From: Schmidtea nova
Lineage: Eukaryota
Assembly (NCBI GenBank): GCA_044892505.1
Contig: CM097883.1
Coordinates: 360,778,001-360,842,000, forward strand
DNA length: 64,000 nt
Direction: 5' to 3'
The position numbers were made by a program, and so were the translations under genes. The notes beneath the pieces are model-generated. The model saw only the letters and a list, made by a program, of their open reading frames with translations, had not been told where the DNA came from and ran no database searches. The stretch's first letter is position 1, and every line of letters begins with the position of its first letter. Shown here in pieces: positions 19,413 to 36,246 of the stretch.

Positions 19413-20399
19413 TGTTGAGGATACCTAAATTCAAAATAATATAATAAATAAACAAAATTACTTGGGGGAAAATTGTCATGGGGAATGACACGATTGATTG
19501 GAGCCTGGGAAAGAAAACGGAAGTAAAAAGGAATGAGAAATGAGAAGGGGAAACAAAAGAAAAGAAATCAGACAAGCAAAACGAAATAGAGGTCAGCACT
19601 AATTAACTAGTGCAAATAGGAAGAAATTCTAAAGTTGGGAAAAACAAAAACAACAACAAGAATTTTATCTTGACAACCGGTCAGAGATAATGTGGGCAAA
19701 AAGCAAACAAGCCGAAGCGGCAAAAAGGAGAAAAACAGAGGTTATCTTGACAGCTGTCAAAGATAACTCCGTTGCTGAAAAAATGAATGGAAAATCATGT
19801 TGGAAAAATGTAACAACAGCTGATAATTTTAAGTGCTACAAAGTGAAGAAGTATAAAAGGAGGAAGCATCTCAGAAAGAAACACAACATTGTATACAGAA
19901 GTGGTTAGAGAAAATATTTGAGAGAAAGCGTTTGAGAAAATAAAGCTAGTAAAATTCATTAAAAAGGAAGCAGAAAAACGTCCAGAGAAAGTTAAAGAAG
20001 AGTCAAAAGGAGAATCCAATAATTGAAACCAGAAACTAAGGGATAAGCAGCAGGAGCTTATTCAAGCGTTGAGAAAATAAAGCTAGTAAAATTCAGAGAG
20101 TAAATCCAAGTCAAATAAAGAAAACAACCAGTCAAATTACCAATTGTTATACTCCCCAGCAGTGAGTGATTTCGAACATCGATTATACACTAGTGCTATT
20201 CTTCACTATAGTGTCGTAATAAGCACTGTATAATCAGCTGTAGTTTGAATTTGGTCAGTTCATTGTAAATCGAAGTTATTTGTGATAATCAATAAAATTT
20301 CCTGTTGTCAGTTGTTATTGTGGGTCAATAAAGAGCACGTTTTGGAGTCAGGGTAATAATTTGTTAATTATAAAGTCACCAACGAAAGATAACCCAACA
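19413..20399 (+). repeat. 5' LTR (987 bp)
   Basis: TGTTGAGGATACC...GATAACCCAACA; matches 35261-36246. Confidence 0.97.
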
Positions 20400-20404
20400 T
20401 TATT

Positions 20405-20422
20405 TGGTGAGCCCGACGTGAT
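20405..20422 (+). promoter_or_regulatory. Primer binding site complementary to the tRNA-Trp 3' end
   Basis: TGGTGAGCCCGACGTGAT begins 5 nt after the LTR and is a 17/18 match to the classic tRNA-Trp PBS TGGTGACCCCGACGTGAT. Confidence 0.88.
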
Positions 20423-20636
20423 CAAACGTTGGTGAGGAGCGATTGAAAAAGTAATTGGGATATATCCGGCGAAATAAAGTGGTGAAGAATTATTGAAATA
20501 AAATTTATTGAAGAGATAGTGAAAATAATTGTGAGGAAAAGAAAATACTAAACAAAATTGTGAAAAGGTAAATTATTAATTGTTGTAATAAATTTGAATT
20601 TAGATTTTGCGAAACTTGAGAAAATAATTTATTAAA

Positions 20637-32016: not shown

Positions 32017-35000
32017 AATTTTATTAAAGAAAGTCTTATTGTTATTTATTTCCAAAAAAAAAAAAAATCCCAAAATTATCTAAATATTAAAAATTCAAAA
32101 AAAAAAATAATAAAATAAAATAAAATAGTAAATATTAATTTCTGCGAAAAATTAAATTGATAGTCCCATAGTTCCTAGAGTAAAATTAATTTCAGTGAAA
32201 AAAAAAAAATTAGAAGTATCAATTAATTAATTGTATAGTAATGATAAAATATATGACAATATATATAATTGAGTATAGTAAAAATTACGATACTAATACG
32301 CCTGTAGTAGAAGTTCGATAGGACGTCACTCAGGTAATATAAATATGTATTTAAGTATAAATAAAAATATATATTTAATATAATAAATGTATAAAAATAA
32401 AAATAAAAAAAAAATTTAATTAAATAATCTGATTATAGGGTTTTCAGAATGCAGATCTCGAACTTCAGGATTTGGATTCTCAAAACCAATTACCCTACCA
32501 GCCTGCAGCACAGGCGTAACCAGCTGGTGAGATAATTTAAAATAATTAATAACACCTATGATAAGGGTAGGTAGGTAAGTGTAATAAAGTAGAATATATG
32601 TATATATATACAAAATCAGTGTTATTATTGTTATTATTGACAGCATTATGATTATTATTATTTTATTAGTATTATTATTATTAGTATCATATTACGATTG
32701 TTATTATTATTAAATTAGTATTGTTGTTATTATTATTATTGTTATTATTATTGGTGTTAGTATTGGTATTAGTATTGTTAAATTATTATTATAATTATTA
32801 TTATTAATATTAATATTATTATTATTGTTATTAGTATTTCTATTTTTATTGTTAATTTCTATTATCATTAAAGTTAAATTTTATTGGCGAGAATTGGTGC
32901 AAATAACGCAAATATATCAACATGCCATTCAACAATAGAAATGCTCACTCGAATCCCTAGCAACAGCGGGATTGGGCATAAGAAGTAGTGACATGAGTTC
33001 ATGGTGGTGTGACGTGGGAGTGTTTAGTCGTCCATGGATTTTGATTTGCAGAGATTTTCAATTGTAGATTGGCTGAGATAGTAGGTGACATTTGGCATGT
33101 GAGTTTTATTCGACAATCTGTCCCGCAAGTGAGTGCTACCACTTGGCGTGAGAGCAATTCGTGGTTTGTTGAGTTGCAGTGATTGCCAGTTGTGTTGTCA
33201 AATGCGTGACGTCACATTTAGGCGAAAGTTCGTAGCAATCCAATTGGGTATGAAAAGAACATTCATTCTCATTAACTGGGATGAAGGTCGTGGAGACCGC
33301 GGGGATGGCATAATAACAACCGATAAATATTACGCAAAGCATATTTTTGTTCTTCCTCGAGCTTAATGAACGTGCTCTCCAACTCCAGATTGTCATGTGG
33401 ATTGTCATACCCAAAGCCGTTGTTTGTGTGGGCTTGTATACTGAAAATTAAAAAAAAAAAAAAAATTGAAAAACCAATATCCTTTATTTTCATAGAAAAC
33501 GAGTTCATTTCAATGCGATTCCTCGGTAGATAGTTCGTGACTGAGATATCGGGAAGCCATTGGTGACGGGGTGAGTGGATTCGCTTGGAGTTATGATGTA
33601 AAATAATAAATTCATTGTATATATAAAACTTACCTTGCACAAAAAAAAAAACAGCAAAACAAACATTTTCCGTTCAATTGGTACTGTTGCATATCGGATT
33701 TCGTGTTGACATGTTTTTGAGAGATTTGACAAGGACTAGCAGTGTTTTTGAGCAAATAATATTACTTTTATTTATTTATTATTTTTATTATTATTAACAG
33801 TAATATTATATTTTGAAAATATCGGCAAAACTAATTTTTCCAAAAGGAATGCCGATTATATAAAATCGGTATTCCATACGTCAATCGAATTGCTGTCTGA
33901 CAAATATTCTAGATAGCAATGCCGCAGTTGAATCGCGGCTAGTAGAGAAATCATAGGCACGTGGGTGCCAGGGAAATTTTGGCATTTAGATGCCACAGGC
34001 GAAATTGGAGATGAAAAAAAATATGAATTCGTTATCTGGACAACTTGTCCAGATAACTGGAAAATTTTAAAGGCACTAAAGTGCCAAATAAACAAAAAAC
34101 AATAAACAGCACAAAGTGCCACAATAAAAATATTGCAGTGGCATAGAGATGCTAAAATAACAAATAATTACGAACGGCACTAAAGTGCCGATAATTAAAA
34201 CATTAATTAATAATAAAAATTATTATTAGTAGTAGTGTAATTATTATTATTATTATTAAAAATATTATTATTTCAGTTAAAGATCGTTAGAAAAAATTGC
34301 TGTCTATTTAAACAAACAAATTAGAAATATTCCGTTTAAAATAAATTTTAAATTAAAATATCTAATTATTAGGAAATTAAAACAAAAACGGGAATTTTAA
34401 TTGCGATTATAATGAAATTTCCAATGTTGAACTAAATTAAATTTGTAATAGTCACGCATCTAACAAAAAAAAAATAATAAATTAAAGAAAAAAAAAAACA
34501 AGATAAAATAAATTTTTGCTTTAATTTTGCAGATTAATTTCCAAAAAAATATTTATGTAGAACATAAAATACTGAATTATAACCAATTATCAAATGGATT
34601 TTCTAATTGCTTTCAATTAATATTACTAAAATTATCATTTTATTATAATAAAAAAAATATATCAATATAATTATTATTATCAATATTATTATCATCATCA
34701 TTATCATCATTATTATCAGTAATATTATTGGTGTATTGATATTAGTGTTAGTATGATTGTTANNNNNNNNNNNNNNNNNNNNNNNNNNNNNNNNNNNNNN
34801 NNNNNNNNNNNNNNNNNNNNNNNNNNNNNNNNNNNNNNNNNNNNNNNNNNNNNNNNNNNNNNNNNNNNNNNNNNNNNNNNNNNNNNNNNNNNNNNNNNNN
34901 NNNNNNNNNNNNNNNNNNNNNNNNNNNNNNNNNNNNNNNNNNNNNNNNNNNNNNNNNNNNNNNNNNNTTATCACTATTGTCAATACTGATGATATAATTA

Positions 35001-35244
35001 TAGGAATTAATTTAAATTAGTAATAGTATTATAGTTATTATCACTACGATAATTATAATTATTAAAATGGGTAGTGTTGTTGTTATTACAGTTAGTATGA
35101 AAATTGTTATCCCTATTATCGTAAACTGGTATTTATATAATAATAATAAATTAGAATATTATAGAGAAGCGTTTATGGGAGAATAATAGTGGGGACATTG
35201 TACGAAAGATAACTTAAAATTTTAATTCGAGGACGAATTTTTTT

Positions 35245-35260
35245 AAAAAGGGGGGAGATA
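35245..35260 (+). promoter_or_regulatory. Polypurine tract
   Basis: AAAAAGGGGGGAGATA immediately before the 3' LTR. Confidence 0.9.
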
Positions 35261-36246
35261 TGTTGAGGATACCTAAATTCAAAATAATATAATAAATAAA
35301 CAAAATTACTTGGGGGAAAATTGTCATGGGGAATGACACGATTGATTGGAGCTGGGAAAGAAAACGGAAGTAAAAAGGAATGAGAAATGAGAAGGGGAAA
35401 CAAAAGAAAAGAAATCAGACAAGCAAAACGAAATAGAGGTCAGCACTAATTAACTAGTGCAAATAGGAAGAAATTCTAAAGTTGGGAAAAACAAAAACAA
35501 CAACAAGAATTTTATCTTGACAACCGGTCAGAGATAATGTGGGCAAAAAGCAAACAAGCCGAAGCGGCAAAAAGGAGAAAAACAGAGGTTATCTTGACAG
35601 CTGTCAAAGATAACTCCGTTGCTGAAAAAATGAATGGAAAATCATGTTGGAAAAATGTAACAACAGCTGATAATTTTAAGTGCTACAAAGTGAAGAAGTA
35701 TAAAAGGAGGAAGCATCTCAGAAAGAAACACAACATTGTATACAGAAGTGGTTAGAGAAAATATTTGAGAGAAAGCGTTTGAGAAAATAAAGCTAGTAAA
35801 ATTCATTAAAAAGGAAGCAGAAAAACGTCCAGAGAAAGTTAAAGAAGAGTCAAAAGGAGAATCCAATAATTGAAACCAGAAACTAAGGGATAAGCAGCAG
35901 GAGCTTATTCAAGCGTTGAGAAAATAAAGCTAGTAAAATTCAGAGAGTAAATCCAAGTCAAATAAAGAAAACAACCAGTCAAATTACCAATTGTTATACT
36001 CCCCAGCAGTGAGTGATTTCGAACATCGATTATACACTAGTGCTATTCTTCACTATAGTGTCGTAATAAGCACTGTATAATCAGCTGTAGTTTGAATTTG
36101 GTCAGTTCATTGTAAATCGAAGTTATTTGTGATAATCAATAAAATTTCCTGTTGTCAGTTGTTATTGTGGGTCAATAAAGAGCACGTTTTGGAGTCAGGG
36201 TAATAATTTGTTAATTATAAAGTCACCAACGAAAGATAACCCAACA
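35261..36246 (+). repeat. 3' LTR (986 bp)
   Basis: Offset to the 5' LTR is 15848 at the start and 15847 at the end; the one indel seen is GGAGCCTGGG versus GGAGCTGGG. Confidence 0.97.

What the first reader, a model, noticed from the sequence alone, without database searches (positions are those of the whole stretch)
19413..36246. Giant, young Gypsy element with a virus-like accessory toolkit in one polyprotein
Seen: a 16.8-kb element with complete LTR/PBS/PPT/TSD and a stop-free 3229-codon ORF ordered Gag - UBL - UBL - Bcl-2-like - Env - PR - RT - RH - IN - tail, plus a cupin/exonuclease ORF2. Known: env-bearing Gypsy elements (errantiviruses) carry env as a separate 3' ORF, and cargo-bearing LTR elements exist (planarian Burro, bdelloid rotifer elements). 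I do not know of this domain combination. Inference: a possibly infectious retroelement lineage that co-expresses apoptosis- and ubiquitin-related modules with its structural proteins.
Basis: partly seen in the sequence, partly recalled or inferred. Interest (0 to 1): 0.95.

Follow-up and report, generated by a model that had tools for sequence, protein, structure and literature searches.

The report
Burro-like env-carrying Gypsy retroelement
This is a complete, recently inserted retrovirus-like element whose single giant protein carries ubiquitin-like, Bcl-2-like and viral envelope modules between Gag and Pol, a layout already published for the planarian "Burro" elements, so it is a new member of a known kind.

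Summary
Positions 19413-36246 are one LTR element. It has 987-nt LTRs with 0 mismatches and 1 indel, TG...CA ends, a 4-bp AAAG duplication, a PBS and a PPT. It carries a stop-free 3,229-codon ORF.

Tools confirm the order Gag (3 CCHC) - UBL - UBL - Bcl-2-like - signal peptide/Env/TM - PR - RT - RH - IN - orphan tail. The evidence:
- UBL: AlphaFold pLDDT 80; Foldseek hits to ISG15/SUMO at E 3e-5.
- Bcl-2-like: profile against PDB hits Bcl-2/Bcl-xL at E 7e-6.
- Env: Pfam PF24664 at E 2e-88.

ORF2 is an ISG20/REXO-type DEDDh exonuclease broken by one frameshift. "Cupin" is unsupported. The N gap lies in non-coding AT-rich DNA. The flanking 139-bp satellite is in phase across the insertion, so both LTRs belong to one event.

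The architecture is not a chimera. Fifteen environmental polyproteins share Env upstream of PR, and two share UBL-UBL-Bcl2-Env exactly.

It is not new either. Arkhipova & Yushenova 2019 described Gag-SUMO-like-BCL2-Env-PR-RT-RH-IN in one ORF for planarian Burro, and GAG-ENV-POL elements are reported in flatworms, bryozoans and nematodes.

What may be new is a compact ~16-kb clade with a conserved 3' exonuclease gene. The host could not be identified.

The parts
19409..19412 (.). 5' copy of the 4-bp target-site duplication (AAAG)
   Evidence: satellite phase test
19413..20399 (+). 5' LTR (987 nt, starts TG, ends CA)
   Evidence: 0 mismatches and 1 indel against the 3' LTR
20405..20422 (+). primer-binding-site-like sequence beginning TGG, 5 nt after the LTR (tRNA not identified)
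   Evidence: a similar layout in relative L007
20637..30326 (+). ORF1, 3,229 codons without a stop; first ATG at 20682
20637..21836 (+). Gag region (aa 1-400) with three CCHC zinc knuckles (aa 272-380)
   Evidence: Pfam zf-CCHC; the N-terminus aligns to relatives that hit Retrotrans_gag or Ty3_capsid
22083..22508 (+). UBL module 1 (aa 483-624): helical part plus ubiquitin-like beta-grasp
   Evidence: paralogue of module 2 (27% identity, E 5e-5); module HMM E 1e-50
22590..22988 (+). UBL module 2 (aa 652-784)
   Evidence: AF2 pLDDT 80, pTM 0.71; Foldseek ISG15/SUMO1/ubiquitin, E 3e-5, rmsd about 2 A; ubiquitin and Rad60-SLD Pfam hits in relatives
23262..23771 (+). Bcl-2-like module (aa 876-1045)
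   Evidence: 3-sequence profile against PDB: 97 hits, the top 60 all Bcl-2/Bcl-xL, best E 7.4e-6; sub-threshold Pfam PF00452; AF2 gives 8 helices but pLDDT 47; Foldseek top hits are the Bcl-2 family but not significant
23772..25736 (+). Env: internal signal-peptide-like segment (aa 1046-1068), ectodomain, TM (about aa 1606-1640), short tail
   Evidence: PF24664 Monjiviricetes_fusion, E 2.4e-88; hydrophobic segments; 14 invariant Cys among 7 lineage members
26046..26339 (+). retropepsin-type protease (aa 1804-1901)
26991..27467 (+). reverse transcriptase (aa 2119-2277)
27654..28043 (+). RNase H (aa 2340-2469)
28365..29426 (+). integrase (H2C2 zinc finger, rve core, C-terminal GPY motif region; aa 2577-2930)
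29427..30326 (+). orphan C-terminal tail (about 300 aa, two hydrophobic stretches); coding but with no detectable relatives
   Evidence: stop-free P=2e-11, against 25 and 29 stops in the other frames; no Pfam, PDB or lineage hits
30537..32016 (+). ORF2: conserved N-terminal domain plus ISG20/REXO-type DEDDh 3'-5' exonuclease; broken by one frameshift
   Evidence: RNase_T 25.8 bits; lineage profile against PDB: ISG20L2 7e-26, ISG20 2e-20, SDN1 2e-16; ExoI-III motifs present; frameshift count
32017..35244 (.). AT-rich, microsatellite-laden non-coding stretch holding the assembly gap (N 34763-34967)
35245..35260 (+). polypurine tract abutting the 3' LTR
35261..36246 (+). 3' LTR
36247..36250 (.). 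3' copy of the target-site duplication (AAAG)

Best explanation
The locus is one full-length insertion of an env-carrying Ty3/Gypsy (Metaviridae) retrovirus-like element of the 'Gag - cargo - Env - Pol' type first described for planarian Burro. It is a compact (~16.8 kb) representative.

Shown:
- It has LTR, PBS, PPT and TSD.
- One uninterrupted ORF encodes Gag, two ubiquitin-like modules, a Bcl-2-like module, a signal peptide plus Monjiviricetes-type fusion glycoprotein plus TM anchor, then PR-RT-RH-IN and an orphan tail.
- A second gene encodes an ISG20/REXO-type DEDDh exonuclease and is broken by one frameshift.
- The same layout recurs in at least 15 environmental relatives.

Inferred mechanism:
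- The full-length RNA is translated as a membrane-threaded polyprotein.
- Gag-UBL-UBL-Bcl2 stays cytosolic.
- The internal signal sequence inserts the Env ectodomain into the ER lumen.
- The TM segment stops transfer, so PR-RT-RH-IN is again cytosolic.
- Signal peptidase and the element's protease then separate the parts.
- A spliced env mRNA is an untested alternative.
- By analogy with the anti-apoptotic IAP module of Burro1, the UBL and Bcl-2-like modules would act on host ubiquitin-like and cell-death pathways to keep the producing cell alive.
- The exonuclease would trim RNA 3' ends, in element RNA processing or against RNA-based defence.
- Env would allow cell-to-cell or organism-to-organism spread.
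For: - Structure of the element.
- Domains: Env 297 bits; PR, RT, RH, IN; signal-like and TM segments; UBL fold; Bcl-2 homology; DEDDh exonuclease.
- Lineage: one search gave 13 polyproteins of 2,099-3,865 aa with PF24664 plus PR, 10 of them also with RT, RH and IN. Searches added two more, one with Env only 25% identical. One search showed UBL-UBL-B-Env in P0005 and the B module in L009. One search gave a weak B match in P0009, which also has two UBL modules.
- Exonuclease gene 3' of ORF1: seen in L001, L004-L007 and L009.
- Constraint: 14 invariant cysteines and about 100 invariant columns in Env at 34-41% identity.
- Literature: PMC6431247, PMC13524379, and Burro1 IAP function as cited in PMC13465017.
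Against: - No Burro sequence could be reached, so kinship to Burro rests on architecture and not on phylogeny.
- Several Burro hallmarks are absent: size above 30 kb, dUTPase, BIR/RING, MATH and ankyrin.
- The Bcl-2-like fold model is poor (pLDDT 47) and Pfam PF00452 is below its threshold.
- The Env fold class was not determined (a PDB profile search found nothing).
- No expression, processing or particle data exist.
- ORF2 is broken in this copy.
- In a gapped draft assembly, repeated LTRs and ORFs can be assembled from reads of several copies, so 'identical LTRs' and 'intact ORF' may overstate the youth of this individual copy.
- No second copy lies in the window.
Confidence: 0.8

Rival explanations
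1. The element is a purely intracellular retrotransposon. Env and the accessory modules are inherited baggage, no longer used for transmission between cells or hosts.
For: There is only one N-glycosylation sequon in the ectodomain. ORF2 is broken here and in L002. No copy-number or expression data are available. No relatives were found in the viral contig collection.
Against: Env is the best conserved non-Pol segment of the lineage. It has 14 invariant Cys, a retained signal peptide and a retained TM in all 7 aligned members at 34-41% identity. The order is kept even at 25% Env identity. A relic would be expected to decay first.
Confidence: 0.2
2. The architecture is an assembly artefact: a chimera of unrelated pieces, or an element joined to a foreign 3' LTR across the gap.
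For: The assembly is a draft with 9 N runs in 64 kb, and a gap lies between ORF2 and the 3' LTR.
Against: ORF1 contains no N and is stop-free over 9.7 kb. The same order occurs in 15 independent contigs from several samples. The two flanks are in the same phase of the 139-bp satellite with a 4-bp overlap equal to the TSD.
Confidence: 0.03
3. The locus is a fresh germline integration of an exogenous, circulating retrovirus-like virus and not a long-resident transposon family.
For: The LTRs show 0 substitutions and ORF1 is intact. There is no other copy or solo LTR in the 64-kb window. Relatives turn up in unrelated environmental and gut-type assemblies, even binned into bacterial MAGs.
Against: ORF2 already carries a frameshift. 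Relatives L006 and L007 have 87-90% identical LTRs, which indicates old resident copies in their hosts. One window cannot give a copy number.
Confidence: 0.15

Closest known systems
Burro / GYPSM1 giant Gypsy elements of planarians (Grohme et al. 2018; Arkhipova & Yushenova 2019, PMC6431247)
   Same: Both have a single giant ORF1 that starts with Gag carrying CCHC knuckles. Both have a SUMO/ubiquitin-like module followed by a BCL2-like module, then Env with mononegavirus-type fusion glycoprotein homology in frame upstream of PR-RT-RH-IN. The proposed role is tampering with apoptosis and ubiquitin pathways.
   Different: The window element is half the size (16.8 kb; 3,229 aa against more than 30 kb and about 4,900-5,100 aa). 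It has no dUTPase, BIR/RING, MATH/TRAF, ankyrin or Smc/AIR1 signal. It has two UBL modules and a conserved 3' DEDDh exonuclease gene that those descriptions do not mention. The host is unknown and no sequence-level comparison was possible.
GAG-ENV-POL 'errantivirus' elements of Platyhelminthes, Bryozoa and Nematoda (Chary & Hayashi 2026, PMC13524379; Sacco et al. 2022)
   Same: Both are Ty3/Gypsy Pol elements with env placed between gag and pol, and the glycoprotein is related to those of negative-strand RNA viruses.
   Different: Those elements are described as separate ORFs with gB-type (class III) Env, and no UBL, Bcl-2 or exonuclease cargo is reported. Here everything is one ORF, and the Env fold class is untested.
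Drosophila errantiviruses (gypsy, ZAM) and mosquito BEL/Pao elements with chuvirus-like glycoprotein (Dezordi et al. 2020, PMC7642597)
   Same: They are LTR retroelements that captured a viral fusion glycoprotein.
   Different: In those, env is a separate 3' ORF expressed from its own mRNA, and they have a different Env family (baculovirus F type) or a different Pol superfamily.
Bdelloid rotifer Juno/Vesta LTR elements with an exonuclease ORF3 (Rodriguez et al. 2017, PMC5408684)
   Same: They carry a 3'-5' exonuclease gene downstream of pol in an LTR retroelement.
   Different: Those are DEDDy (RNase D-like). This one is DEDDh (ISG20/REXO-like) with a conserved N-terminal domain of unknown fold.
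Viral Bcl-2 homologues of large DNA viruses (for example BHRF1 and GIV66, which appear among the Foldseek hits)
   Same: A virus-encoded Bcl-2-like module is presumed to control host cell death.
   Different: Those are free-standing proteins of DNA viruses. This module is a segment of a retroelement polyprotein that sits directly before the Env signal sequence.

Membership tests
Ty3/Gypsy (Metaviridae) LTR retroelement | pol domain order PR-RT-RH-IN | tested here: met
   Pfam
Ty3/Gypsy (Metaviridae) LTR retroelement | LTRs with TG...CA, 4-6 bp TSD, PBS after the 5' LTR, PPT before the 3' LTR | tested here: met
Ty3/Gypsy (Metaviridae) LTR retroelement | Gag with CCHC zinc knuckles | tested here: met
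   (three knuckles)
Burro | Env in frame between the Gag-side cargo and PR | tested here: met
Burro | SUMO/ubiquitin-like module followed by a BCL2-like module just upstream of Env | tested here: met
Burro | giant size (element above 30 kb, ORF1 about 4,900-5,100 aa) | tested here: not met
   16.8 kb and 3,229 aa
Burro | dUTPase between PR and RT | tested here: not met
   no PF00692 hit at E<=0.05
Burro | BIR/RING (IAP), MATH/TRAF, ankyrin, Smc/AIR1 motifs | tested here: not met
   none found in ORF1; ankyrin occurs only in relatives P0005 and P0030
Burro | RT/IN clusters with Burro1-4/GYPSM1 | not testable with these tools
   no Burro sequence is reachable; the protein searches returned none
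Burro | host is a dugesiid or geoplanoid planarian | tested here: inconclusive
   host not identified: 30% GC, no RNA genes, named Pol relatives only 33-42% identical
GAG-ENV-POL errantivirus-like elements | env between gag and pol on a Ty3/Gypsy backbone | tested here: met
GAG-ENV-POL errantivirus-like elements | gB-type class III fusogen fold | tested here: inconclusive
Monjiviricetes fusion glycoprotein (PF24664) | score above Pfam's gathering threshold | tested here: met
   297 bits against 27
Bcl-2 family | sequence homology over the BH1-BH2 region | tested here: met
   profile A5 against PDB, E 7.4e-6, top 60 hits all Bcl-2/Bcl-xL
Bcl-2 family | Pfam PF00452 above the gathering threshold | tested here: not met
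   14.1 bits against 31.4 for the window; 23.2 and 15.6 bits for two relatives
Bcl-2 family | eight-helix bundle fold | tested here: inconclusive
   AF2 gives 8 helices but pLDDT 47; Foldseek ranks the Bcl-2 family first but with E>=0.25 and TM about 0.25
Ubiquitin-like proteins | beta-grasp fold | tested here: met
Ubiquitin-like proteins | C-terminal Gly-Gly for conjugation | tested here: not met
   no Gly-Gly follows the beta-grasp in the window or in relatives (alignment)
DEDDh exonucleases (RNase_T / ISG20 / REXO) | Pfam PF00929 above threshold and ExoI-III motifs including the His | tested here: met
   25.8 bits against 24; motifs; PDB profile hits
DEDDh exonucleases (RNase_T / ISG20 / REXO) | uninterrupted reading frame in this copy | tested here: not met
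   one frameshift
Cupin | any cupin family or structure hit in ORF2 | tested here: not met
   none in Pfam or PDB sequence/profile searches; fold not tested
Troyka | CG...CG termini and 3-bp TSD | tested here: not met
   TG...CA termini and a 4-bp TSD (definition from PMC12440569)

The most novel reading that the evidence does not exclude
The window element and its environmental relatives form a separate, undescribed clade of compact (~13-17 kb) env-carrying metaviruses, distinct from planarian Burro. The clade would be defined by three features. The first is a membrane-threaded Gag-Env-Pol polyprotein with an internal signal peptide. The second is a variable cargo bay before Env, which always holds a UBL module, often a Bcl-2-like one, and sometimes other modules. 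The third is a conserved ISG20/REXO-type exonuclease gene. On this reading it is a retroelement with a dedicated host-defence countermeasure set.
Probability: 0.3. Interest if true: 0.65.

Novelty: new member of a known kind. Interest (0 to 1): 0.45.

Why it matters
Env-carrying Gypsy elements sit on the border between transposons and retroviruses. This copy shows the published Burro core layout (Gag-UBL-Bcl2-Env-Pol in one reading frame) in a compact, apparently intact form. The layout recurs in many environmental assemblies, so it is a stable genome plan and not a planarian oddity. The conserved ISG20-like exonuclease and the variable cargo bay give concrete candidates for how such elements handle host cell-death, ubiquitin-like and RNA-based defences. 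The internal signal peptide also poses a clear question about how one polyprotein is sorted to both sides of a membrane.

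Tried and rejected
**Searches that led nowhere**
- Single-sequence PDB searches with Env and with aa 441-1040 found nothing meaningful. The Env profile against PDB found nothing. The tail against PDB and Pfam found nothing.
- An exhaustive HMMER search with aa 401-1040 gave only 9 hits, all fragments of similar elements and no cellular UBL or Bcl-2 proteins.
- The viral contig collection holds no relative. A close-relative scan of metagenome contigs found none.
- The phosphomevalonate-kinase-bearing relative was not located.
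- Lee et al. 2026 (Burro1 function) could not be read and is cited only through PMC13465017.

**Host identification failed**
- No tRNA or Rfam genes were found.
- The window's other ORFs are transposon remnants.
- Pol relatives from named organisms are only 33-42% identical.
- The contigs of the closest relatives are unnamed or mislabelled MAG contigs.

**Rejected readings**
- Troyka: rejected on termini and TSD.
- Misassembly: rejected by the phase test and the relatives.
- Cupin: rejected at sequence level.

- The AF2 model of the Bcl-2-like segment is low confidence, so its Foldseek ranking is used only as weak corroboration.
- I took no contig for human.

1. In my reasoning I briefly recalled a short motif of cellular Bcl-2 from memory.
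2. My scripts printed per-frame alignment bounds that bracket the ORF2 frameshift. In one search this happened before I knew the gene was broken.

Full report

Yes. The ORF listing gives one + strand ORF at 20637..30326 of 3,229 codons. Given the local base composition, the chance of no stop is about 1e-120.

BLASTN of the two ends gives LTRs at 19413-20399 and 35261-36246. They align over 987 columns with 0 mismatches and 1 indel. The LTRs start TG and end CA. AAAG lies directly outside both (19409-12 and 36247-50). A TGG-initiated PBS-like sequence begins 5 nt after the 5' LTR, and a purine tract (35245-35260) abuts the 3' LTR.

**2. The gap**

N 34763-34967 is one of nine N runs in the window. 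It lies in a 3.2-kb AT-rich, microsatellite-laden stretch (32017-35244), downstream of ORF2 and upstream of the PPT. No + strand ORF touches it, so no reading frame depends on it.

Continuity across it cannot be shown, and I did not try to fill it. Indirect evidence supports one insertion. The element sits in a 139-bp tandem repeat. The last base of the 5' flank and the first base of the 3' flank map to the same phase of that repeat with a 4-bp overlap, exactly the TSD. Both LTRs therefore bracket one insertion event.

**3. Domain content of ORF1**

Pfam finds:
- zf-CCHC. The sequence shows three knuckles at aa 272-380.
- PF24664 Monjiviricetes_fusion, E 2.4e-88, 297 bits.
- PR at aa 1804-1901, RT at 2119-2277, RH at 2340-2469, and IN at 2577-2762.

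A hydrophobic signal-peptide-like segment (aa 1046-1068) opens the Env segment, and a TM segment (about aa 1606-1640) closes it.

*UBL modules.* Between Gag and Env, BLASTP shows two copies of one module: 27% identity, E 5e-5, and module HMM E 1e-50 and 2e-52. AlphaFold2 of the second copy, with an alignment of 9 sequences, gives pLDDT 80 and pTM 0.71. The model has four helices followed by a beta-grasp. Foldseek against PDB returns ISG15, SUMO1 and ubiquitin at E about 3e-5, probability 1.0 and rmsd about 2 A over about 79 residues. Relatives' modules hit Pfam ubiquitin (3 members, best 4.8e-5) and Rad60-SLD. No Gly-Gly follows the fold.

*Bcl-2-like module.* The segment aa 876-1045 has detectable homologues in P0005, P0018 and L009, and weakly in P0009.
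- A three-sequence profile (A5) searched against PDB sequences gives 97 hits. The top 60 are all Bcl-2/Bcl-xL, best E 7.4e-6, covering the BH1-BH2 part.
- Pfam PF00452 is the top or near-top hit of each segment but below threshold.
- The AF2 model is all-helical (8 helices) but has pLDDT 47.
- Its Foldseek list is dominated by Bcl-2 family members without significance.

I accept 'Bcl-2-like' on the profile evidence.

*Tail.* The 300-aa tail after IN is coding: stop-free P 2e-11, against 25 and 29 stops in the other frames. It has no relatives, Pfam hit or PDB hit. All relatives also have 297-709 aa post-IN extensions, often with an extra PR-like domain. These are not homologous to this tail.

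**4. ORF2 (30537-32016)**

ORF2 hits RNase_T above threshold. A lineage profile hits ISG20L2 (7e-26), ISG20 (2e-20), SDN1 (2e-16) and PAN2 in the PDB. The ExoI, ExoII and ExoIII (His) motifs are all present in the window copy, so it is a DEDDh exonuclease.

Compared with intact relatives, and with a 75%-identical fragment (P0143) that is continuous, the window gene is broken by one frameshift.

The conserved N-terminal domain of about 200 aa has no Pfam or PDB match, so 'cupin' is unsupported.

**5. Relatives**

A word-seeded search with the Env region found 13 polyproteins of 2,099-3,865 aa at 35-43% Env identity. All carry PF24664 plus PR, and ten also carry RT, RH and IN in the same protein. 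A metagenome scan added L009 and the more distant L011. L011 has Env 25% identical, with Gag-Env-PR-RT-RH-IN in one 2,693-aa ORF.

The contigs are 4-32 kb with 31-41% GC. They come from several ENA and JGI assemblies and from two contigs mis-binned into bacterial MAGs.

Features across the lineage:
- The UBL module is present in nearly all members that include the N-terminal part, and is doubled in P0005, P0009 and P0015.
- P0005 has exactly UBL-UBL-Bcl2-Env. P0009 has two UBL modules and only a weak B match (E 1.6e-4) before Env.
- Other members have unrelated sequence in that slot, so it behaves as a variable cargo bay.
- The exonuclease gene follows ORF1 in L001 (two paralogues), L004, L005, L006, L007 and L009. 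It is in pieces in L002.
- Fusion of the reading frames varies. L003 ends Gag-UBL-Bcl2 with a stop before Env. L002 has Pol in a second ORF. L007 has Gag in an overlapping frame.
- Env is under clear constraint, with 14 invariant cysteines among seven members at 34-41% identity.

The architecture is therefore a lineage property and not a one-off chimera. No other copy lies in the window.

**6. What is known**

- Arkhipova & Yushenova 2019 (PMC6431247) annotate planarian Burro/GYPSM1 ORF1 as Gag (retrotrans_gag plus 2-3 CCHC), MATH/TRAF, Ubi2/SUMO-like, BCL2, Env with hits to mononegavirus fusion glycoproteins, PR, dUTPase, RT, RH and IN. [quoted passage not shown] They propose that the apoptosis and ubiquitination domains meddle with host systems.
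- Chary & Hayashi 2026 (PMC13524379) report GAG-ENV-POL Gypsy elements with gB-type Env in Platyhelminthes, Bryozoa and Nematoda.
- Sacco et al. 2022 described the nematode case.
- A 2026 study reportedly showed that the Burro1 IAP module protects planarian stem cells from apoptosis. I know it only through PMC13465017.
- Rotifer LTR elements with a DEDDy exonuclease ORF3 are a precedent for ORF2 (PMC5408684).
- Troyka is excluded by its termini and TSD.

**7. Mechanism (inferred)**

The single ORF with an internal signal sequence and one stop-transfer TM predicts a membrane-threaded polyprotein. Gag-UBL-UBL-Bcl2 would be on the cytosolic side, the Env ectodomain in the lumen, and PR-RT-RH-IN cytosolic again. 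Signal peptidase and PR would do the cutting.

After signal-peptidase cleavage, the Bcl-2-like module would be left next to a hydrophobic C-terminal segment, reminiscent of a tail anchor. This is speculation, because L003's version ends without one.

The ectodomain has no furin-like motif and only one N-glycosylation sequon. This is compatible with a class III fusogen but is not a test.

A spliced env mRNA cannot be excluded.

**8. Verdict**

- The novelty claim is not supported, because the core layout is published.
- Membership in Burro proper is open. The core features are met, while size, dUTPase and IAP/MATH/ankyrin are not, and phylogeny and host are untestable here.
- I file it as a new member of a known kind, with moderate interest. 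The interest comes from the compact clade, its environmental spread and the conserved ISG20-like exonuclease gene.

Caveat: in a gapped draft assembly, repeats can be assembled from pooled copies. Identical LTRs and an intact ORF1 may therefore describe the family more than this individual copy.

Noticed in passing
window 19159-19412 and 36247-36620: The element is inserted in a tandem array of a 139-bp AT-rich satellite (about 80-85% identity between units).
   Followed up: partly
window 32017-35244: There is a 3.2-kb AT-rich stretch full of TTA/ATT/TAT microsatellites between ORF2 and the PPT. It is much longer than the corresponding region of the relatives, and the assembly gap sits in it. 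Its origin is unexplained; it could be expanded repeats or a degraded extra gene.
   Followed up: partly
window 9286-9798 (+), 47278-47838 (+), 58485-59852 (-): Other mobile-element remnants are present: an IS1595/ISXO2-like DDE transposase fragment, a mariner-type Transposase_1 fragment, and an ORF with weak DUF7041 and Ig V-set hits.
   Followed up: partly
relatives P0001, P0007, P0011, L009 (for example P0001 aa 1916-2011 and 3082-3179): Several relatives carry two or three retropepsin-like domains, one of them after the integrase. The window element has only one.
   Followed up: partly
alignment A1; P0005 aa 2588-2695; P0030: Cargo differs between relatives. P0005 and P0030 have ankyrin repeats. 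One member of A1 has a strong phosphomevalonate kinase hit (PF04275, E 1.5e-34). I did not find which member (it is not P0001, P0005, P0007, P0009, P0010, P0011 or P0012).
   Followed up: partly
L007 1-7194: The contig flank next to a relative's 5' LTR carries fragmented bacterial-type genes (MacB, ABC transporter, YknX, TetR). This is either a chimeric metagenome contig or a host with horizontally acquired genes.
   Followed up: no
L006 16872-18689: A family-B DNA polymerase ORF (PF03175, Polinton/Maverick type) lies about 500 bp beyond the 3' LTR of a relative, which points to a eukaryotic, transposon-rich host region.
   Followed up: no
L001 2-38 and 16741-16777: The 16.8-kb contig of the best relative has a short terminal overlap, as expected if an assembler collapsed the two LTRs of one element.
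   Followed up: no
P0143, P0027/L008, P0032, P0019: Short fragments 63-75% identical to parts of the window element exist in public data (metaclust, a 'Turicibacter' MAG contig, ENA). Closer relatives than the full-length ones are therefore out there, but only as pieces.
   Followed up: partly
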